Origin: Narcine bancroftii
Lineage: Eukaryota
Reading direction: 5' to 3'
DNA length: 64,000 nucleotides
NCBI RefSeq assembly: GCF_036971445.1
Contig: NC_091470.1
Coordinates: 189,782,001-189,846,000, forward strand
Numbering within the stretch: position 1 is the stretch's first letter; every line of letters begins with the position of its first letter. Under the pieces are notes generated by a model. That model was given only the letters and a program-made list of their open reading frames with translations, was not told the DNA's origin and searched no databases. Shown here piece after piece: positions 12,304 to 48,520 of the stretch. The position numbers and the translations under genes were made by a program.

Positions 12304-12639
12304 AAACTGGAGGTCGATGCTATTGCCATCCAGTTGGAGGGAGTCCAGGCGGAATATTTGTGAGAAAAGTTTAATATATTGTATATTTAAAATTCAATCG
12401 GGGGATTGAATTCAAGCGTGGTCACGAGTGTAGCAGTTTCATCGGGTTACACTTGGACAGAGGGATGATCGTTGAACTCTCCAGGACTGTCAGGTTGCGG
12501 AGGGTTCACTGTGGCATCCAGATATGCCGGGGGATGGGGGGTGGGGGAGTGTAAGGTCTTGGATTGGACCCCTCTGCTGCCCATGGGGTGGTATCCAAAG
12601 CCTTAGCAACCCTCCCTCCCCTTGGATCTGACCTCTCTT

Positions 12640-13140
12640 CCACCCCCCACCCCCGGCTCCAGACAGACCGAGAGCAATGGGTGGGGTCGCGATGCCTTTT
12701 GCCTAAGAGCTCGCCGCGCTGAGAGAGAGCAGCTCACCGGCCCCGTGTGCGGGCTCGTCTTCAGGGAGCCGCTGTCCCTGGCCGGCGGCCACACATCGTG
12801 CAGGGAGTGCGTGAGCGGGCTGCGGACGGACCAGAGCTCGACCGGCTGCAGCCCAGCGGAGGTGGCCGCCAGGATGGCGAGCACCCTGCGGGAGATCCCG
12901 GAGCTCGGCGAGGGCCAGCAACCGGGCGAGTGCGAGCAGCACAACCTGCCCTACACCGCCTTCTGCCTGGATGACATGAGGCTGGTCTGCGACAAGAGCG
13001 CCAGGGAGTGTCCGACGATCCCGGTGAAGGAGGCGGCCGAGCGATTCAAGGTGCCTGACACCCGCGGGTGGATCTCGGAACCGGGTCTTGGTGGTGCAAC
13101 CTTGTTCAAGTCAGTGGCTGATTAACCCGGACCGCTGGGC
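12640..13140. promoter_or_regulatory. CpG-island-like region over TRIM exon 1
   Basis: Visibly high GC and CpG density relative to the CpG-poor flanks. Confidence 0.55.
12663..13050 (+). CDS. TRIM gene exon 1: degenerate RING plus degenerate B-box; first usable in-frame ATG at 12874
   Basis: Frame of ORF 12622-13125 reads EQLTGPVCGLVFREPLSLAGGHTSCRECV (RING-like) and CEQHNLPYTAFCLDDMRLVC...IPVKEAAERFK (B-box2 end typical of TRIM exon 1). Upstream CTGAC + pyrimidine tract + AG at 12661-62. Donor AAG|GTGCCT at 13051 (phase 0, weak consensus). CpG-rich. Confidence 0.8.
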
Positions 13141-37155: not shown

Positions 37156-37708
37156 TTATCCGTCGCCATGGGGTAAGGCTTCTCACTAAGTGCTACTCTT
37201 CAAGGGAGACACTGCTTTGTTTGCCATGCAGTGCATGTGGATTGTGCATGATGCAGGTCTCCAGATATTTCCATGAGCTGAAGCACCCACAAACCTTCCT
37301 TTCCTTGGCCTGGAAGCTGCCCGCGCGGTGGCTCTGCCCGGCACCATATAACTACCTGGGATGTAGGAATAGTGCGGATTAGCAACTGGCCATTTGGTTC
37401 AAGTGTCCACCTATCACTTCTCAGCTTCTACCCTCCCACCTGTATCCACCTATTACCTCTTACCTGTTAGTCTGGGCTCTTCCCCTTTCCCCCATCCTCC
37501 CCTCCTGCCACCTCCCTTTTTAGAGCCCAGAAAGGGTCAATATTGGTTACCCTTCACTTCCTGTGGACGCTTCACGACCTGCTGAGTTTCTCCAGCACGT
37601 TTGTGTATTGGATTGGTCAAAATGGTTGGTTGCCTTTAAGGTGAATGTTATCTCTTTTTCTCTCTCTCTCTCTCCCACACACCCTAACACTGACTTTGTA
37701 TATTTCAG

Positions 37709-38271
37709 TTCCTACCCTCCTGACACTGGACCCAAAAACAGCGAACTCTCACCTCATCCTGTCACGGGATGGCATGGAGGTGCGTGTGGGCGACAAGCAG
37801 GAGGACCTGCCGGACAATCCGGAGAGGTTCAGTCACTGGCTCAGCATCCTAGGCTCAGAGGGCTTCACCTCCGGCAAGCACTGCTGGGAGGTAGAGGTGG
37901 CTGAGAGCTCCGTCTGGCAGGTGGGGGTGGCCAGGTCTGCCGTGCCCCGTAAGAGAGGCTTCGCTCCATTCCACTGGCAGGAGAGCCGCAAGTTCTTCAC
38001 GCCAGAACCCAATGCGGGGGTGTGGGCTTTGGCCTCACAAGATGGCGACTACGCAGCTCTGACCTCGCCTCCTGTTGAACTGCACCTGAAGGGAAGGTTG
38101 AGAAGGCTGGGGGTTTACCTGGATTATTCCGCCGGACAGGTGTCCTTTTACAATGCCGATGACATGTCCCACCTCCACACTTTCACCGACACGTTCACCG
38201 AGGCAATGTTCCCTTACTTCTACATTGCTCACAAGGGAGACTCACTGCGACTAGTCACACTGGGGATCTAA
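37709..38271 (+). CDS. TRIM gene last coding exon: PRY/SPRY (B30.2) domain
   Basis: tatttcag| then LTLDPKTANSHLILS...LPDNPERF...LGSEGFTSGKHCWEVEV...LGVYLDYSAGQVSFYN...HLHTFTDTFTEAMFPYF; stop TAA 38269-71. Confidence 0.97.
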
Positions 38272-39149: not shown

Positions 39150-41820
39150 TTTTAGAAACCGACTTTTCTGGCTTTTGTATTTGCAAAATCTTTCAAAATA
39201 ATTTCAAAGTCAATGCTTTTAGTAATGTCATTTTCTATAGATAGCATCGCCAAATTGTTTAGTCTCTCTTGTGAAATTATGTTTTAATCAGTTTTACTTT
39301 GGAAAAACTTCTTTCCCCCACCCCCCCCCCCCCCCACCTCACCCCCAGCCCGATGCGACTGTTACAGGCATTGTTAAGTAAACCCTCAAAGCAATAAAAA
39401 CATTAGGAACTGCTGTGAATCGGTTGTTTCCATCCAGGTATTCAAACAGAGCTTGAGGCTTAACCACACTGAAGGGAAGAAAAGTTTTCAGACCTTCAAG
39501 TTCTTCGGCCAACAGATAACCATCCACGTCTTTAGTGTGTTTCAGTAACTGCCCCTTCATTAGTGCTCTGTTTTAGTATGCTGTCAGTTAAAGCTGCTTC
39601 AAGGTCTGCCGTGTGTTTCCTTATTTCCACCTTTTCTAAGCTCTAAAAGTTATTTAAAAATCCAAATAATTTTACATGGCTTCTAAGCTGCTTAAATCTA
39701 GACTCTAAAGATTGAATAGCTTTGTCTAGCACTAAGCTGATCTCTGTGCTTCTTTTGGATCATCTAAAGCTCGATCTTTTGCCTCGTATGAAAACATTCT
39801 CTTCCTTCTACGTAGTTTTTTTTCTTGAAATTGTCTAAACTCCAATGGTAATTCAACAGCTTCAGCCAATTCATTTGCGCCTATTAGGACATCATTAAAA
39901 CCGCCCTCTCTATAAATTCTTAGCCATGATAATAGTTTTTCAAATGACTCAATGTCCTTTGTTTCACTTTGTAGTTTCTTGTTACATAGTTAACTTTAAA
40001 AAGTACTTCATGCCAAAATATCAAAGAAACTAAAAATTTGTAGCCTTTTAGCTGGTTTGCTAAAGATTCAGCTTCTGCTTTTACCTTGGGCTCATCTGTT
40101 ATCTCTGATATTTCCACAAGTGCATCATATACTTCTCCAACCTGATAACAAACAGCTTTAACACTATCAATCCGACACTCCCACCTTGTGTTGCTCAAAG
40201 GTTTCACTGATAACCCGGGTACATGTTTGGTAAAAACTGCCCACCTCTTAGTTGATGCTGAGAACACTATGTAGATCCTTTGCAAGATCCCAAAAAATGT
40301 TATAGCATCTGGACAACACTTGGCTACATCTCCGAGTAAAAGGTTATAATTGTGACATGCACAGGGTACAAAGAAAGCTCTTGAATTATCCTTCAACAGT
40401 CGTGCTTGTACTCCAGATGTGTGACCTTTCATGTTGCTTCCGTTGTCATAGCCTTGGCCTTGAATGTCTTTCACCTCTAAATTTAATTCCTTCAGTGTGT
40501 TTAATAATGTTTCATATAAATATTCTCCTGTGCTACTTTCAACCTGCATAAACTTTATGAAATGTTCATAAACACCTGAAGGAGCCAAGTTACCATCAGA
40601 CACATACCTGATCGTTAGAGACATTTGCTCTTGGTGGCTCATATCAGGTGTACAGTCTAAAATTATGGCGTAGTAATTAGCTGCTTTTACGCGTTTCAGT
40701 ATCTCATTCAAAACAGCTGTAGCCATTATGTCTAGTAGTTCATTCTGAGTATCTTTTCCTAAATAATGATTATGAATTTGGTGGGTTTTGACTTTTCGCA
40801 AATGTTCTCAAGAACAGGGTCAAACTTTCCAAACAGCTCAGCAAGACCTAAAAAGTTTCCACTGTGTACACTCTTATTACCAACTTTTTCCTCTGTTCCT
40901 CTAAATGCTAGATTTCTCTCAGCAAGAAACTGCGCTCTTGCTCCTAACCTTTTGAATACTTGGTGCCAGTGCTTTACATGTTCATTGACAATTATTTCAA
41001 GTTCTTTGTCAATTAGTGGGTCCACTACAAAGTCTTTGGTGTAACTCCCAGAAACTCCATGTGGCTTCTAAATGGTTTTTAGAATTTTCATGCTCATACA
41101 ACCTTGTATGAAGATTAGACCAGTTGTTGAATCCACTTGTTGATAATGCACTGGTTGTGTTCTTACTACAAAAATTTACAATAAAAGCAATAAATTCTAT
41201 CAGCGGACTGAGAGTATATAATCCAAGGTCTGTCAACACACTCCCCATTTGGAACTTTCCTCTTGCAGTGAAACTTGGAAAAACATAATCCCTTTTCATT
41301 TCGTGGAAAGTTGTTCACTGGAATAGGAGGACCTTTCATTGTTAAATAATCTCTTACATTTAGATATATATATATATATATATATATATATGCTGGCCAG
41401 TTGGCTGGGTCATCATAAATGTTAAATACAACTGTACTCATGGATGATCCATCATTGCGTGATGTTTGGCTTGGTCTTTTTCGGCTATAAGTGGACTTTC
41501 CGCTTTGGCACTGTCTTCTGGTGTAGTGAGATGGTCTTCAATTTAATTCACAGCTTCGTCATCCTTTTCTAACTTGTTTTCAATTTCATCATTGAATTCA
41601 ACACTGTAATTGGACTCAAGGCTGTATTGTTATTTTCTGAATTGTTTTTGTTTTCTTCATCTTCAATACATGGACGCTTCAAAGATGGAGTGACAGGTAA
41701 TTTGGTAATAGCACCTCTATGTTTTTCATTTTCAGCTACCTTAGCCTTGGCCAGTGCTTGTTTCTGGTTGCCACTTAAATGCTTTGGTCCTTTGTCTCTA
41801 TCTCTGCTTGTCCTTGCCAT
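39150..41820 (-). pseudogene. Frameshifted hAT transposase (TTF-type zinc finger, DUF4371 core, hATC dimerisation region)
   Basis: RPWIIYSQSADRIYCFYCK; FLAERNLAFRG...GNFLGLAELFGKFDPVL; YYAIILDCTPDMSHQEQMS; GQGYDNGSNMKG; VPCACHNYNL; LSNTRWECRID; PNVFIALRVYLTMPVTVAS, spread over several frames. Confidence 0.92.
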
Positions 41821-42180: not shown

Positions 42181-44014
42181 CATTGTTGGTACAAGATAAG
42201 AAACCAACGTCAATCTCACATCATTTTGCTCATTAGCTTTACGTTGTTCCAACGTCAGCTGCTGACCTTGGAACAAGGCACCCAACTCTCAACTTGTGAA
42301 CGCCACCAAACAGCAAAACAAGTGACCGATTCTGGATTTGTTGAATGATGACAACTTCGAATAAGGTAAGAATTGCCTTTTTTTAGTAATAATTAGGTTA
42401 GTTAGGTTAGGTTATGTTAGTTAAGCTATCTCAATCTCATATTAAAGTACAAGTTCTCTTGTTGATCAACCTATAGCCTGTTTTGAGCTTGATAATAATA
42501 AGAGATGCTTCATCAGCTCCGGAATACATCTATCTCACTGGGACAAATGAATACAAAACATGACATTTTTGGCTAGGGAGACAAAGGAAGCCTACAGCCA
42601 GTAGTTTAATCGAAGACATATTTCCTAAAAATATTTCACTGAGATGATACGTTCAATTAAGGGCAATAACTTCATGAGTTCACTGACAAATCCCTCAGTT
42701 TATAAGGCCTATAGTATTATTATTTTCTTACCAGTTTAAACGAAGTCCGTCACAGTGTTCTCTGCTCAAGGCCTGGGCTCAAACACGTGCGCAGGGCCCC
42801 CTTGAGGCGTGGGGCCCAATTTAATCAAATTGGTTAAATAGGCTTAAAACCGGCCCCTGTCTACGAGCTATTTGGATCCAACCCACGCAATGGTTTCACA
42901 CCTGCTCTATCTTTGAACATCCGAAGGTGAAATTCCACCTCATTAGTTGTCCTGGAGCCAAGTGATGATGTCTCCGACATATTGAACGATCCAAAATTTA
43001 AAAATTTCATCTTAAAATTGCATCTCAAATACGGGCAGGAAAACAAATGAAGAAGTTCTACAAAGAATGAAAACAAAACATACATTACGTAAAAGAAGCA
43101 GAAAACATCAAGCAAAATTCTTTGGACACAAGTGGAAGCAAGAAGCAGGGGCTGGCAGAGAATGAAAGTGAGAGGTTGGTTAACATCGTGGTGAGAAACA
43201 CGGTCAGGGACCGTGATGGATGGAGACACATGGTGGCCCATGCCGAACAGCAGGGTCCCTGAAACAAGCGTCCTGTATGCCGGGTCTAACGTGTATCAAC
43301 GAAGTCTCAGCGTCACTCCGACCGACTTGACTGCTGTCGGCTCGCTACAAGCTTTAAGCAGTCTGTTGCAGGAGCCGATGGTAGTTTCTTTTAAAATATG
43401 CAAACAAAATTAAAACCTTTACAAGGTAGCTTACTAAAATGGTGTGATTTTGCTTTGAATGGTATCCACTGCTCAGCGTTAAGTGCCCAATTTTGGGTCA
43501 TCCTATACAAAGGGTATCGCCTGCATTTGAGGTGGAAATTCAGGGGTCATCCTTTACAGACTCGTCCCAGACGATGGAATATCTCAGAGGTTCTCTGAGG
43601 AAGAAGCCATCAATCACAAGGAAGGCCTGGTCCCTATATAGCACCGCTGACCCCTTGTCAAGCACCCTGAGGCCTAGAGCAATCCACAAAACCACAGGAG
43701 AAACTCTGCAGGACAGGCAGTATCGATAGGAAAAACAAGGCAGACGGCGTTTCATTTCCCGATGAAGGGCCCAGCACGAAACATTGGTTACCCTTGTCTT
43801 CCTAGGCTATTGACGCTGAGTGACCTGCTGGGTTTCTCCAGCACATTTCTGTGTTGCTTGAGTGGGGAGAGTTCCGTCTTCCCCAGTTCGAACCCGACTG
43901 CTGTTTTCAACCAAAGGTTTCAAACGAGCCTCCCTGCTCACAAGGTCATTGGGAGGTATTGAAGGGCAACAGTGGATGATACTGGAGATCTTCAGCTGGG
44001 AGAGGAATCATGGC

Positions 44015-44445
44015 TGGGATAGAGGACACGGCTGGGTGAGGGGATGGCTGGGAGAAAGGCACAACCCTAGGAGAAGACACAGGAATACAGCTGGGAGAGG
44101 GGACAGGGATATGGCTGGGAGAGGGAACACAGCAGGGAGAGGGGTCACAGCTGGGAGAGGGGCACAGAGACACGGCTGGGAGAGGGGACAGGGCAAGGCT
44201 GGGAGAGGGGACAGGGCAAGGCTGGGAGAGGGGACAGGGCAAGGCTGGGAGAGGGGACAGGGCAAGGCTGGGAGAGGGGACAGGATCACGCTGGGAGGGG
44301 GTCATGGCTGGGAGAGGGGCACACTCCTGGGTGAAAGCACAGGAATGCAGCTGGGAGAGGGGACACAGCTGGGAGAGGGGTCACGGCTGGGAGAGGGGCA
44401 CAAGGACACAGCTAGGAGAGGGGATATGGCTGGGAGAGGGCACAT
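44015..44445. repeat. G-rich GCTGGGAGAGGGG tandem array (~21-26-bp units)
   Basis: Core GCTGGGAGAGGGGACAGGGCAAG repeated. Confidence 0.92.
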
Positions 44446-44902
44446 GAACTGTTTGAATGAAAGGGTAACTTTGCTTTGGTTCTTCCTTCTCTGTGTTACC
44501 GAGGTATTTTGCAGATTCTGTCCCCTCCACTCCCCGACCCAGGACACTTGCTTCCAATAATCTCGACACACTAAGTGCAGTTTTCTACTCCTCCTTGGAT
44601 TGTAATGTTATGATCTCAATGTCTGTGCCGGGCTGAACTTGGATAGTTTGCTTGCTTAGCAGAATCTGTAAATACCACAGTGACAGCATCAGAATCAAAC
44701 AGGAAGAAAAGTGGTTCATATTTAGGATAATTGTGCAAATTAATCAAAGACAATATCATTTGGGGGGGTGTGGCAAGATGGCGTAGGGAACAGACATGCC
44801 TTCCAGACCTCTCCTGACTCTGATTTATTGTTTTGTCTTTAAGTACCTGTTAAAGTTCTTTTAAAAGTTTATAAATAATAAGAGGTGCTGGATTAGTGCC
44901 TA

Positions 44903-46168
44903 ATGGTTTATATGCCAAAAAAAGGTAAAAGAAAACATCAACAGACTGTTAAAAAACTACATTTTCCAAAATTGTCTGAGCCTACTTGTTTAAAAGAAGC
45001 CAGGACTCAGCGTAGAATGGATCCAGAGGAAGACGTACAGAGTTCGGCATTGAAACTCCGTTTTAAGCCGGTGAGGCTCTTTGAAGGTCGCATTCAACAG
45101 CTTTCAGACCAAAGAGCTGGACGGGTGCCAGTATTTCACACAACGGCCACTGTGAGTGCTGTTACTCAGACTTTGACAGTTGAATCAGCTGGGGCACCAC
45201 CAGTTGGAGAGTTAAGGAGCTGTCATTCGACTGCTACAGTGGTGGCGCTGCAAAATGCATCTTCAATTACAACGGTTTTTCCAGACATCGATTCAGTGAA
45301 GATGATTAAAGAGATTTGGCTTAAAGATAACCTTAATCTTCAGTCTCCTGGCATTGCTGGGGGGACTTTGAGAGGGATTTTTATACGAAGTCAAACTGCT
45401 AGAAAAGATACTAAATTAAGGGAAGGGACAGAAGATCCTGTGGTCTCTAAGGAACAGCAAGACCCCATTATGCCTGAATCTACTTCTGTTGAAATGTCTG
45501 TTAAGGATCTTGAAGATAAGATATATTCTGTATCGAGTCACTTAGCTAATTTTGTGAACCTGTTTATTTCCAAGATTAATGCGATGGCGGAAGTCATTAA
45601 TGGAGCTTTTAAGCTTGAAACCATTGAAAGATTTGAAATGTGTGATCAAGGCTTAGTCGATGCACAGGATCAACTGCAAGATGAAAATAGAATAATTGAA
45701 ACATTGCAGATCCAAAATAAAAATTTAGCAAAAAAGGTTGATTATTTGGAGAATCAATCTAGATGGAACAACGTGAAAATTGTTGGTTTGCCAGAAGGCA
45801 TAGAAGGACCAGATCCAAGAAATTTTTTTACTGAATGGATTCCACGAGTGTTAGGACAGGATAAATTCCCTGAAGGTTTAATACTGGAACGTGCTTATAG
45901 AGTTTTAAGAAGAAAATCTTTTTCAGGACAGAATCCAAGATCTGTTTTGATCCGTTGTTTAAACTATTGTGACAGAGAGACAATTTTACGTACGGCTATT
46001 AGAAATGCCCAGCAAAATAGATCTCCTTTGATGGTTCAGAATAATCCTGTTTTCTTCTATCAAGATTTGAGTCAAGAAATTATGTTTCAACGACGCAAAT
46101 TTAATCCTGTGAAAGAATGGTTGTGGAAAAAAGACATAAGGCAACATTCAGGTATTCTGCGGTACTGA
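44903..46168 (+). CDS. L1 ORF1p (coiled-coil, RRM, CTD); frameshift near 46130 and stops in the C-terminal tail
   Basis: LENQSRWNNVKIVGLPEGIEG...ILERAYRV...PRSVLIRCLNYCDRETIL...FFYQDLSQEIMFQRRKF; continuation KATFRYSAVLKIF in a shifted frame. Confidence 0.88.
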   Translation: MVYMPKKGKRKHQQTVKKLHFPKLSEPTCLKEARTQRRMDPEEDVQSSALKLRFKPVRLFEGRIQQLSDQRAGRVPVFHTTATVSAVTQTLTVESAGAPPVGELRSCHSTATVVALQNASSITTVFPDIDSVKMIKEIWLKDNLNLQSPGIAGGTLRGIFIRSQTARKDTKLREGTEDPVVSKEQQDPIMPESTSVEMSVKDLEDKIYSVSSHLANFVNLFISKINAMAEVINGAFKLETIERFEMCDQGLVDAQDQLQDENRIIETLQIQNKNLAKKVDYLENQSRWNNVKIVGLPEGIEGPDPRNFFTEWIPRVLGQDKFPEGLILERAYRVLRRKSFSGQNPRSVLIRCLNYCDRETILRTAIRNAQQNRSPLMVQNNPVFFYQDLSQEIMFQRRKFNPVKEWLWKKDIRQHSGILRY

Positions 46169-46784
46169 AGATTTTTTAGGATGGAAATTAGCCAAAGTTC
46201 TTTGACAATCCTAAAGAGGTTATGGATTTTGCTCAGTCTCTACCAATCATGCAGTTTCAGGAACGATGTAGTCCTTCAAGGTCTCCAAAGAGAGTAGAGA
46301 TGTAAGGTGGGATCCATATTTTTAAAAGAAATGGAAGCAATGGTGACCGAAGTGGTAACGTTGATTTAAAAAAATTAATCTTTTATCTTTTTTCTTGAGA
46401 AGAGTTTAAATAGTTTAAATAATGATGATAGTTTAATGAAATGGGAGTTGGGAGAGGGAACTGGGTGGGCACTAGTTTCCAGAAGTCATCAGCTACCTGT
46501 GAGTTATCTCACACCCAATATTTTGGGGGAGTTACCGCTTTGGGCGGTTTAAACAGGAGGAGGTAGTTGTGACCTCCGACCTGTTTTTTTTTCTTTTTAA
46601 TTTTTGGGTTAAGAAGTGAAGGTTTTTTTTTATTATTTTTTTAAATAAATATTTTTTTTTAACTCTTTTTGTTTTCTGATTGTAATTGAGAGGGAATTAG
46701 GAGGTTTTTTTTCTCTCCTTTTTTTTCTCTTTTTTGGGGTTTTTTTTCTCTTTTTTCTTTCTTTTTTAAGAGGATAATATCACA

Positions 46785-46979
46785 GAAGATAATAAGTCAA
46801 AAATTGAGGATGTTGAATTAGATGAAGAGGAAGATGAGGGGAAAGGTGATAAGAAGAAAAAGAAGAAAATTAAGTACAAATACATTGAGGGAGAAGAGTT
46901 TAATAAAATTAAGTTAATTTCGATAGAGAATTTTGAAGATGTTATAAATGAAGAATATGGAGAATTTTATAAGAGTTTG
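46785..46979 (+). pseudogene. HSP90AA1: Captured fragment of cytosolic HSP90 (alpha-type charged linker / start of middle domain) inside the L1 derivative
   Basis: Hand translation [65 protein letters not shown] versus recalled HSP90-alpha [64 protein letters not shown]. Confidence 0.88.
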
Positions 46980-47004
46980 AACTTTTTTTATATAAGGGGA
47001 GGGG

Positions 47005-47145
47005 AAGGGAATAAAAAGTTTATCTGATTGTTTTTCTAAGGGATGTTTTTGTTCTCTTGATGAATTATAAAGGAAACTTGGTATTAATGGAAATTCTGTA
47101 TTTATGTATTATTAATTATGATTTTTTGTATAACAGATATGTGGT
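47005..47145 (+). pseudogene. Residual L1 ORF2 (post-RT region) fragment
   Basis: [43 protein letters not shown] resembles the fish L1 ORF2 KGI...DCF..G.F.SF..L..K.GI.....F.YYQLR.F motif; stops fall where CAA/CGA are expected. Confidence 0.7.
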
Positions 47146-47588
47146 TGATATATGATTTTAATATTTGAACTTAGTTTTAAAGTGGATTTCATTTGTTAAA
47201 TACATGTATTATGTTTGATTTAAATATATGTTTAAGGGTATTATTTTAGTATTGATATTTTTTTGTTAATTTTTTTTGTTGTTAAGTTTTATCCTTTTTT
47301 TTGTAAATGGGTTTTTTTCTATTTTATTTACAACATTGTTAATTAATTCTTCACTCTTTATTTTGGGGGGAGGGTTGGACTAATTTTAAATTAGATGATT
47401 AATGTTGTGTTATAATTATTGGGAGGGTTAATTTGTGTAGTTTAATGATGTAGTATTCTAATTTTTATTATCTTATTTTTTATTATTTCTTTAAATGTAA
47501 TTTTTATTTTATTCATGTCATAAAATTTTAAATAAAGTTTAAAAAAAAAGACAATATCGTTTACAGTCTACGCTTCCAGGACTAATTA

Positions 47589-47999: not shown

Positions 48000-48520
48000 C
48001 AGCAGAAATATCTTGTGAATATCACCACATAAGGAGTATCCAACAGATGGATGGGTGACCAGCAGGAGAGGCAGGGTGTGTAAGCAGACAGTGTAAGGTT
48101 CTGCTGGAGCTATTCCCCTCACTTTGGGTACTGATTGGGGGAAGGCCTTTCAGAGGCGAGCAGCAGAGGCATTTGAGTTAGTGGCAGGTAAGGGTGTGGG
48201 CGGGGAGATGGTGGCAGGAGAGACGATGGTGAGGGCGCTGGCAGGAGATCCACCGGGTCTGGGGAATAGAGGCCATGCCTGGAGGACTTTCTCAATGGGG
48301 AGGGTGAACAGCCAGAGGTCGTTGTACACATTGGTACAAATGACATAGATAGCGGTCCTGCACAAAGAGTACAAGCAGCTGGGTAAGAGGTTGGGAAGCA
48401 GAACCCCAAGGGGAGTGATCTCGGGATTACTCCTGGCACTACGTGCTGGTGAGCTCAGAAAAAAGACAGGTCAGATGAATTGGTAGGGGCCAGGACCAGG
48501 TTTTCAGATCACCGGGATCT
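48000..48520 (+). mobile_element. Degraded CR1 ORF1 fragment
   Basis: GEGEQPEVVVHIGTND-like; ISGLL. Confidence 0.65.

What the first reader, a model, noticed from the sequence alone, without database searches (positions are those of the whole stretch)
46560..47540. Strand-specific C-to-T conversion across the non-coding half of the element
Seen: only 6 C in the ~210 nt at 46771-46980. Changes relative to HSP90 are those expected from C>T (TKP to IKL, P to F, T to I, S to L, L to F). In the ORF2 remnant YYQLR has become YY*L* (CAA>TAA, CGA>TGA). G is retained, the losses are not restricted to CpG, and ORF1 stays open for 421 codons. Known: APOBEC3-type editing of first-strand cDNA gives G>A on the sense strand, the opposite signature. 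Inference: recurrent C-to-U deamination of the element RNA (or of the exposed sense DNA strand) over many retrotransposition cycles, with purifying selection protecting ORF1. The HSP90 insert would act as a built-in mutation reporter for a deaminase-retroelement interaction.
Basis: partly seen in the sequence, partly recalled or inferred. Interest (0 to 1): 0.82.

Follow-up and report, generated by a model that had tools for sequence, protein, structure and literature searches.

The report
Sense-strand C-to-T loss in ray half-L1
A retrotransposon copy in the electric ray Narcine bancroftii that keeps only the first LINE-1 gene has lost almost all cytosines to thymines on its RNA-sense strand in its last ~0.8-1 kb, and a captured piece of the host HSP90 gene shows that mutation caused this, on the opposite strand to known APOBEC3 editing.

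Summary
Window 46771-46980 has 6 C in 210 nt. Window 46560-47540 is 5.3% C and 47% T, and C/(C+T) is 0.09 against 0.46 in the rest of the window. No other ~1 kb stretch of the 64 kb falls below 0.32.

The HSP90 origin of 46770-46979 is confirmed (E=6e-14). At conserved HSP90 codon positions 1 and 2, about 8 of 10 ancestral C became T. Only 2 of 20 G became A (p=3e-4), and the changes are not at CpG.

Three points qualify the finding:
- **Sharp 5' edge.** The depletion starts abruptly. Non-coding 46169-46581 keeps C/(C+T)=0.31.
- **T-tract.** In 46582-46769 the low C is mostly long T runs.
- **ORF1.** Synonymous sites show the same skew more mildly (0.19 against G/(G+A)=0.37), while positions 1 and 2 are normal (0.46).

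The best reading is an inherited, lineage-long, sense-strand C-to-T(U) pressure filtered by selection. It is near saturation only in sequence that has long been unconstrained. Whether an enzyme drives it, and whether it acts on RNA or DNA, was not shown.

The scan had already reported this family with the same reading 4.59 Mb upstream (s1-876405).

The parts
44749..44761 (+). Left target-site duplication (gacaatatcattt)
   Evidence: Read. It matches 47550-47562 at 12 of 13 bases, and the one mismatch is at a CpG.
44762..44902 (+). 5' UTR of the element; starts with a G run
   Evidence: C 22 of 137, C/(C+T)=0.32, so not strongly depleted.
44903..46168 (+). ORF1, 421 codons, L1-type (coiled-coil, then RRM/CTD-like part)
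   Evidence: Open frame. Relatives of 91-94% identity in Narcine bancroftii. Weak collinear match to human L1 ORF1p, 2ldy, E=0.14. Atlas look-alikes carry PF02994. No Pfam hit. Synonymous C/(C+T)=0.19 against G/(G+A)=0.37, and positions 1+2 give 0.46. The last ~11 codons are frameshifted relative to P0001 and P0003.
46169..46581 (+). Post-ORF1 zone with near-normal C content; its first ~90 nt are the recently disabled C-terminal tail of ORF1
   Evidence: C/(C+T)=0.31. After the stop, 16 of 19 residues still match the C-terminus of P0003. The family stop 'LKIF*' is CAG>TAG and is shared with P0001.
46582..46769 (+). T-run-rich tract, ending in a T/C tract plus AG (a possible splice acceptor)
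   Evidence: C/(C+T)=0.105, but 0.33 once T>=5 runs are removed. The change point of C content is at about 46582.
46770..46979 (+). Captured HSP90 coding fragment (charged linker to '...EYGEFYKSL'), sense orientation, 6 C in 210 nt
   Evidence: PDB HSP90-alpha/beta E=6e-14. 221 HSP90 fragments at E<=1e-3, 120 of them spanning the insert. C>T 85% per site against G>A 10%. Two-fold pyrimidine sites are T23:C3. The frame stays open from 46770 to 47024.
46980..47540 (+). C-poor, T-rich tail of unknown origin with AATAAA at 47533-47538
   Evidence: A157 C26 G92 T285 for 46981-47540. C/(C+T)=0.084, or 0.107 without T runs. No relative was found in the window even with C and T merged.
47541..47549 (+). 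Poly(A) tail
47550..47562 (+). Right target-site duplication (gacaatatcgttt)

Best explanation
This is one copy (44762-47549, flanked by a target-site duplication and ending in poly(A)) of a multi-copy, ORF1-only L1 derivative ('half-L1') of Narcine bancroftii. Along the replicating lineage that gave rise to it, cytosines of the RNA-sense strand were repeatedly turned into thymines, while guanines were largely spared. The likely routes are C-to-U deamination of the element's RNA, or deamination of the displaced sense DNA strand of transcribed source copies.

Selection removed changes that damage ORF1, so there the skew shows only at synonymous sites. Sequence that has been unconstrained for a long time (the captured HSP90 piece and the tail, 46770-47540) has drifted to about 5% C, close to saturation or equilibrium. 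Sequence released from coding constraint only recently (46169-46581, the ex-tail of ORF1 and what follows) is still near normal. That difference explains the abrupt 5' edge. The copy inherited this state; it is not a scar acquired at this locus.

Shown here: the direction, the strand, independence from CpG, the sharp edge, and the ORF1 codon-position contrast.
Inferred: inheritance across copies, many cycles, and deamination as the chemistry.
Unknown: whether an enzyme is involved, and whether the substrate is RNA or DNA.
For: - HSP90 reporter: C>T at 8.3 of 9.8 ancestral C, against G>A at 2 of 20, A>G at 1.5 of 49.5 and T>C at 0 of 14.7.
- Composition: C/(C+T) 0.09 and G/(G+A) 0.38 in the module, against 0.46 and 0.46 in the background. 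The module is an extreme outlier in the window.
- ORF1: synonymous C/(C+T)=0.19 against G/(G+A)=0.37 (p=1e-4), with positions 1+2 at 0.46. A hAT-like ORF in the window is AT-rich but symmetric (0.34/0.31), and host TRIM exons are symmetric (0.68/0.66 and 0.79/0.84).
- Amino-acid changes on the branch leading to the family: 7 C>T against 2 G>A.
- The ex-coding ORF1 tail: 4 C>T (two Q>stop, A>V, T>M) against 1 G>A, and still 16 of 19 identical to P0003. The CAG>TAG stop is shared with another copy, P0001.
- Changes private to single copies are about symmetric, C>T 2-4 against G>A 2 each. Ordinary post-insertion decay would give that.
- Low-coverage runs of about 2 Gb hold 0.61-0.63 of this copy's 31-mers, and two other organism labels hold 0.57 and 0.32. 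My estimate is that this is more than the 5' two-thirds alone could supply.
- Other readers flagged the same architecture at several other places in the genome. These are leads only.
Against: - No DNA of any other copy could be read, so sharing of the converted sites is inferred and not seen.
- The abrupt step at about 46582 could instead mean a different history for the 3' module (a chimera) or region-limited editing.
- The 5' UTR and 46260-46581 are non-coding yet keep C/(C+T) near 0.31. That needs either constraint or recent origin, and neither is shown.
- ORF1's T-rich third positions could partly be the ordinary codon habit of ray L1s. No autonomous L1 was available for comparison.
- The HSP90 piece may be under selection (85 open codons, a phase-compatible splice), which would bias it as a reporter.
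- The host HSP90 CDS was not available, so ancestral codons are parsimony guesses from protein conservation.
Confidence: 0.55

Rival explanations
1. One or a few hyper-editing bursts, limited to the 3' module, hit an ancestor of the family. An enzyme acted on a stretch that was single-stranded or exposed, and all descendants then inherited the result. ORF1's milder skew would have a separate cause.
For: Abrupt change point at about 46582, from 0.31 to 0.09. Uniform depletion across the HSP90 piece and the tail, 0.10 and 0.08-0.11. GpC is completely absent, 0 of 57 (p=0.004), which hints at a sequence preference.
Against: About 85-90% conversion in every context except a residual ~11% is far above known single-event hypermutation. 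ORF1 synonymous sites and the recently disabled ORF1 tail show the same directional bias, which argues for a continuing process. The context signal is weak after correction for multiple tests and is absent at ORF1 synonymous sites (6 of 26 after G).
Confidence: 0.2
2. The module was built in the opposite orientation. It would be an A-rich, G-poor stretch of a retroelement that had undergone classical first-strand (G>A) editing or the usual A-rich LINE bias, and that carried an antisense HSP90 piece. It was later incorporated inverted (nested insertion or twin priming), so it now reads as C>T.
For: The C-poor block begins with a T10 run and holds many T runs, which are complements of A runs. 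The edge is sharp.
Against: The module runs without a break into the element's own AATAAA and poly(A) on the + strand. HSP90 lies in the sense expected from RT template switching. ORF1 synonymous sites and the ORF1 tail carry the same + strand skew. No internal target-site duplication is seen.
Confidence: 0.07
3. The composition is selected and not mutational. A U-rich, C-poor 3' region would be favoured, for example for RNA stability, for binding by the partner's machinery, for avoiding CpG or C-targeting defences, or as an intron and second exon.
For: G runs are kept. The T/C tract plus AG before the HSP90 frame, together with an 85-codon open frame, could be a functional intron-exon pair.
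Against: Selection for composition would not by itself give a spectrum in which essentially only C>T is raised at ex-HSP90 sites. The same bias appears in the dead ORF1 tail, including nonsense changes.
Confidence: 0.08
4. The pattern is a private scar or an artefact: this copy alone was deaminated after or during insertion, or the assembly is wrong here.
For: None directly. It cannot be formally excluded because no read or copy alignment was obtained.
Against: The composition switches exactly at the element's ends. Private ORF1 changes are few and symmetric. Words of this copy are held by many runs of several organism labels. Other readers independently described the same HSP90-bearing, C-poor architecture at other loci.
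Confidence: 0.04

Closest known systems
APOBEC3-type DNA editing of retroelements (G-to-A clusters on the sense strand; Knisbacher & Levanon 2015, PMC4866542)
   Same: Strand-biased transition hypermutation of a retroelement, kept as a fossil in the genome.
   Different: The strand is the opposite one. Here C>T is on the sense strand with G spared, and that study uses C>T clusters as its noise control. The pattern is family-level and near saturation, whereas APOBEC3 editing leaves clusters in single copies. APOBEC3 is reported as specific to eutherian mammals (abstract of PMC5399452).
Directional C-to-U change of plus-strand RNA genomes (coronaviruses; Simmonds & Ansari 2021, PMC7831814)
   Same: C>U on the RNA-sense strand only, accumulating over replication cycles and leaving a C-poor, U-rich genome. 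This is the closest match in how it would work.
   Different: Those are RNA viruses. Here the carrier is a nuclear retrotransposon whose changes are fixed as DNA. The depletion is much deeper (5% C). RNA-level editing is not shown here.
HAL1 / half-L1 elements of mammals (ORF1-only L1 derivatives; mentioned in PMC5753468 and PMC4161310)
   Same: Non-autonomous element keeping an L1-type ORF1 and lacking ORF2, with a target-site duplication and poly(A).
   Different: The host is a cartilaginous fish. The element carries a captured HSP90 fragment. The extreme sense-strand C loss is not a described HAL1 feature, as far as my searches reached.
Transcription-associated strand asymmetry of germline mutation (excess C>T on the non-template strand; own knowledge, not checked in a paper here)
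   Same: The same direction on the same strand, with deamination of exposed sense-strand DNA as the proposed cause.
   Different: In genes the known effect is a skew of a few percent. It does not approach loss of about 85-90% of cytosines.
RIP of fungi
   Same: C>T conversion of repeated DNA to the point of saturation.
   Different: RIP prefers CpA and raises TpA. Here CpA obs/exp is 0.85 and TpA 0.76. RIP is not known in vertebrates. ORF1 is spared here.

Membership tests
APOBEC3-type first-strand cDNA editing footprint | Excess of G>A over C>T on the element's sense strand | tested here: not met
   C>T 85% per site against G>A 10% at conserved HSP90 positions. G/(G+A) 0.38 against C/(C+T) 0.09.
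APOBEC3-type first-strand cDNA editing footprint | Clusters private to individual copies relative to their subfamily | not testable with these tools
AID/APOBEC-like deamination of the sense strand (any enzyme) | A dinucleotide preference at the edited C (TC, CC or WRC) | tested here: inconclusive
   Residual C is never preceded by G (0 of 57, p=0.004). It is equally frequent after A, T and C (11-13%). No such effect at ORF1 synonymous sites. Near-saturation hides preferences.
Half-L1 (HAL1-like) non-autonomous retrotransposon | L1-type ORF1 protein | tested here: inconclusive
   No Pfam hit. Weak collinear match to human L1 ORF1p RRM-CTD, 2ldy, E=0.14. A profile search of the PDB found nothing. 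Atlas look-alikes carry PF02994, score 0.93. The structure model failed, pLDDT 35.
Half-L1 (HAL1-like) non-autonomous retrotransposon | No ORF2 / reverse transcriptase, yet hallmarks of target-primed insertion (target-site duplication, poly(A), AATAAA) | tested here: met
   The only ORF of 50 aa or more on the + strand of the element is ORF1. 13-bp duplication, AATAAA and A9.
CpG methylation decay | C loss confined to CpG, symmetric on both strands | tested here: not met
   Lost C were followed by C, A or T in the inferred HSP90 codons. G is spared. CpG is additionally low, 2 sites.
RIP-like repeat mutation | CpA>TpA preference with raised TpA | tested here: not met
   CpA obs/exp 0.85 and TpA obs/exp 0.76 in 46560-47540.
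Sense-strand RNA C-to-U bias (as in plus-strand RNA viruses) | C>U only on the RNA-sense strand, accumulating over replication cycles | tested here: met
   Direction and strand. Accumulation under selection is inferred from the ORF1 codon-position contrast.
Sense-strand RNA C-to-U bias (as in plus-strand RNA viruses) | Editing visible in RNA relative to the DNA template | not testable with these tools
Runs X6-X9 are only guessed to be RNA.

The most novel reading that the evidence does not exclude
A cartilaginous fish, which lacks APOBEC3, has an activity that deaminates cytosines of L1-derived RNA, or of the displaced sense DNA strand of transcribed source elements. It could be AID-like, another AID/APOBEC-like deaminase, or an RNA C-to-U editor. 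It acts in the germ line, cycle after cycle. That would be a heritable retroelement-editing footprint of the opposite strand polarity to the mammalian one, with the captured HSP90 piece serving as an internal clock of its action.
Probability: 0.2. Interest if true: 0.8.

Novelty: new variant of a known kind. Interest (0 to 1): 0.6.

Why it matters
Strand-biased hypermutation of retroelements is the main genomic trace of deaminase-based defence, and it is known almost only as G>A on the sense strand in amniotes. A family-wide loss of about 85-90% of sense-strand cytosines in a fish half-L1 would point to a different substrate (RNA or non-template DNA) or a different mutator. A host-gene fragment inside the element proves the direction of change. 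The element also offers a natural system in which mutation pressure and selection on ORF1 can be separated site by site. If the cause turns out to be spontaneous RNA deamination or reverse-transcriptase bias, it still sets a useful upper bound on how far such a bias can drive a nuclear element's composition.

Tried and rejected
- Second copy in the window: none.
Local base counts do include them.
- Word search with the 85-aa HSP90-derived frame, to find other copies' versions: only genuine HSP90 exon fragments, at most 68% identical. They served as the reference set.
- Findings search by sequence: blank.
- Autonomous L1 in the window as a codon-usage comparator: none. Pfam on ten ORFs gave TRIM exons and a hAT-like ORF.
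- Structure of ORF1: pLDDT 35, unusable, so no fold search. PDB profile search: blank.
- ORF2-remnant claim (YYQLR): no reference and only short stop-riddled pieces, so not tested.
- Open frame of the HSP90 piece as proof of selection: rejected as weak. Shuffling gives 3e-5, but that is the wrong null for a sequence that began as an ORF. My rough estimate is a 5-50% chance of staying open.
- RIP, CpG decay and classical APOBEC3 polarity: rejected on context and strand.
- Literature searches found no description of sense-strand C>T in LINEs or of this family.

Full report
**What is there**

The finding lies in the 3' part of a 2,788-nt insertion, 44762-47549 on the + strand. A 13-bp target-site duplication flanks it (44749-44761 and 47550-47562, one mismatch at a CpG). 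It ends in AATAAA (47533-47538) and A9.

The insertion has one long frame, 44903-46168, 421 codons. The closest relatives of this frame are 'uncharacterized proteins' of the lesser electric ray Narcine bancroftii: 94%, 91% and 89% identical, plus a 64% relative, P0003, with a longer C-terminus.

The evidence that it is an L1-type ORF1 is modest:
- Pfam finds nothing.
- The best PDB match is human L1 ORF1p RRM-CTD (2ldy), collinear over residues 290-412 but only E=0.14.
- A profile search of the PDB is blank.
- ESM-Atlas look-alikes carry PF02994 at score 0.93.
- A structure model failed, pLDDT 35.

There is no ORF2. The element is therefore an ORF1-only ('half-L1', HAL1-like) derivative. Other readers of this scan noted the same architecture at several other loci of this genome. 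One follow-up, s1-876405, 4.59 Mb upstream, reached the same overall reading as I do. Those notes are leads, not evidence.

**The observation**

It is correct.
- 46771-46980 holds 6 C in 210 nt. 46560-47540 is A290 C52 G176 T463.
- C/(C+T) is 0.09-0.10 against 0.465 in the rest of the window. G/(G+A) is 0.38 against 0.456.
- No other 959-nt stretch of the window goes below C/(C+T)=0.32.
- The composition returns to normal exactly at the poly(A)/duplication border.

**Did it arise by C>T mutation?**

The frame 46770-46979 is an HSP90 fragment, from the charged linker through '...[11 protein letters not shown]'. It matches PDB HSP90-alpha and -beta at E=6e-14 and 221 HSP90 exon fragments in the protein collection.

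I used the 60 best-scoring of the 120 fragments that span the insert as the reference set, and took only columns conserved in at least 90% of them (47 codons, positions 1 and 2). The fates of the ancestral bases are:

| Ancestral base | Sites at risk | Main change | Count |
|---|---|---|---|
| C | 9.8 | C>T | 8.3 (1 kept) |
| G | 20 | G>A | 2 (16 kept) |
| A | 49.5 | A>G | 1.5 |
| T | 14.7 | T>C | 0 |

- Fisher p for C>T against G>A is 2.9e-4. With the closest single fragment, P0008, as reference over 69 codons the result is the same: 10 of 14 against 6 of 34, p=6e-4.
- The lost C sat in Pro (CCN), Thr (ACN) and Ser (TCN) codons and were followed by C, A or T. CpG decay therefore cannot explain them.
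- At two-fold pyrimidine sites the insert has T23:C3.
- Other changes exist too: about seven transversions and A>G changes, such as W>S, E>Y and D>E. The capture is old and the sequence is not purely 'converted'.
- Limit of this test: the ray's own HSP90 coding sequence was not obtainable, so ancestral codons are parsimony inferences from protein conservation.

**Where the depletion starts**

A two-segment likelihood scan of C among pyrimidines puts a single sharp change point at about 46582. Non-coding sequence upstream (46169-46581) has C/(C+T)=0.31 and downstream it is 0.09 (2dLL=46.7). 'The non-coding half' is therefore not uniformly affected.

Within 46582-46769 the low value comes mostly from T homopolymers. 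Without runs of T>=5 it is 0.33. 46770-46979 and 46980-47540 stay at 0.10 and 0.107. The demonstrably converted block is 46770-47540.

**The rest of the element**

ORF1 shows the same skew in a milder form, and only where selection allows it (Fisher test):

| Sequence | C/(C+T) | G/(G+A) |
|---|---|---|
| Element ORF1, synonymous sites | 0.19 (37 C / 156 T) | 0.37 (Fisher p=1e-4) |
| Element ORF1, codon positions 1+2 | 0.46 | 0.40 |
| hAT-like ORF, synonymous sites | 0.34 | 0.31 |
| Host TRIM PRY-SPRY exon, synonymous sites | 0.68 | 0.66 |
| Host TRIM RING/B-box exon, synonymous sites | 0.79 | 0.84 |

The comparators are symmetric and ORF1 is not.

- Amino-acid changes on the branch leading to the family, polarised with P0003 and P0006/7, are 7 C>T against 2 G>A.
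- The family's ORF1 is cut short relative to P0003 by a CAG>TAG stop ('LKIF*'). Another copy, P0001, shares this stop.
- The 19 codons beyond the second stop are still 84% identical to P0003's tail, so this part lost its coding role only recently.
- The changes in that tail are four C>T (two Q>stop, A>V, T>M) against one G>A.
- Changes private to single copies are few and roughly symmetric: C>T 2-4 against G>A 2. That is what ordinary decay after insertion gives.

**Reading**

Together these point to a sense-strand-specific C>T(U) pressure that acted along the replicating lineage.
- Selection filters it in ORF1.
- It is near saturation in sequence that has long been free to drift: the HSP90 piece and the tail.
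- It is barely visible yet in sequence released from coding constraint only lately (46169-46581).

This accounts for the sharp edge without a special mechanism.

That the state is inherited and not a scar of this copy is supported indirectly by:
- the codon-position contrast, which needs selection over many generations of copies;
- the shared stop with P0001;
- the symmetric private changes;
- the fact that low-coverage runs of about 2 Gb hold 0.61-0.63 of this copy's 31-mers, and two other organism labels hold 0.57 and 0.32.

From the private divergence of ORF1 (about 0.85% per site) I estimate that at most about 0.5 of the words could be held if the 3' third were private. This is a rough inference.

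**Mechanism**

The polarity excludes the classical route, deamination of first-strand cDNA, which gives G>A on the sense strand. PMC4866542 uses C>T clusters as its negative control. The remaining candidates are:
- C-to-U change of the RNA, enzymatic or spontaneous, as argued for plus-strand RNA viruses in PMC7831814;
- deamination of the displaced sense DNA strand of transcribed source copies;
- a reverse-transcriptase misincorporation bias.

Nothing here separates them. The only context signal is that no residual C follows a G: 0 of 57 against about 11% after A, C or T (p=0.004). This is suggestive at best after multiple testing, and ORF1 synonymous sites do not show it. CpA and TpA frequencies rule out a RIP-like preference. 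Sharks have AID (PMC5931798, abstract) and APOBEC3 is reported as eutherian-specific (PMC5399452, abstract). No deaminase inventory of this genome was possible.

**Rivals**

- A region-limited burst of editing in an ancestor. It fits the sharp edge, but it does not fit the about 85-90% conversion or the continuing bias in ORF1 and its dead tail.
- An inverted origin of the module, that is, a classical G>A history read backwards. It fits the T runs at the edge. It does not fit the module's continuity with the + strand AATAAA/poly(A), the sense orientation of HSP90, or the ORF1 skew.
- Selection for a U-rich 3' region.
- A private scar or an assembly artefact.

**A point that weakens the 'neutral reporter' idea**

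The HSP90-derived frame is still open for 85 codons (46770-47024). It is preceded by a long T/C tract and AG at 46769-70. A donor-like CAG|GTATTC sits at 46151|46152, where ORF1 is in phase 1, so exon 2 from 46771 would continue in the HSP90 frame. The phases fit only because this copy's A-run near 46126-46131 is one base shorter than in P0001/P0003-type copies. Another reader raised the same idea on another copy (s1-878724). I did only the phase arithmetic. An open frame is weak evidence by itself, since the piece began as an ORF and had few codons at risk.

They were masked in the local search and are included only in local base counts.
- The ORF2-remnant claim (YY*L* at 47107-47121) was not testable.
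- The large representative-protein search was not used.

**Verdict**

Novelty: a new variant of a known kind, namely strand-biased deamination-type hypermutation of a retroelement but on the sense strand, family-wide and near saturation, in a cartilaginous fish. The scan had already found it on other DNA of the same genome.

Noticed in passing
window 46151-46152 (donor-like CAG|GTATTC), 46700-46770 (T/C tract + AG), 46770-47027 (85-codon frame + stop): In this copy ORF1 could be spliced in phase to the still-open HSP90-derived frame. The phases match only because of a 1-nt shorter A-run near 46126-46131. If the splice is real, the HSP90 piece is a coding exon and not neutral sequence.
   Followed up: partly
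window 46117-46305: The family's ORF1 is truncated relative to the 64% relative P0003 by CAG>TAG ('LKIF*', shared with P0001). The sequence after the stops is still 16 of 19 aa identical to P0003's C-terminus. This copy also has a private frameshift that changes its last ~11 codons.
   Followed up: yes
window 46560-47540: The dinucleotide GpC is completely absent: 0 of 57 pyrimidines after G are C, against about 11% after A, C or T. This could be a sequence preference of the mutator or chance.
   Followed up: partly
window 48280-48400 (+): Just downstream of the element, a frame reads '...PEVVVHIGTNDI...'-like sequence. It is reminiscent of the esterase-type ORF1 of CR1/L2-like LINEs, so it is probably another retroelement fragment.
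   Followed up: no
window 43862-44560: G-rich repetitive stretch with strong GC and AT skew just upstream of the insertion. It has long frames on both strands that encode 'GRGDR/AGRG'-type and 'PSPS'-type repeats.
   Followed up: no
window 39923-40801 (-): 293-codon frame with a DUF4371 match (E=1e-8), a hAT-type transposase remnant. It is AT-rich but strand-symmetric at synonymous sites and was used as a control.
   Followed up: partly
window 12622-13122 (+) and 37645-38268 (+): TRIM-type exons (RING/B-box; PRY-SPRY) with GC-rich, strand-symmetric third positions. They were used as the host baseline.
   Followed up: partly
runs X6-X9: Four small runs guessed to be RNA hold 45-51% of the element's words, so the family may be expressed.
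   Followed up: no
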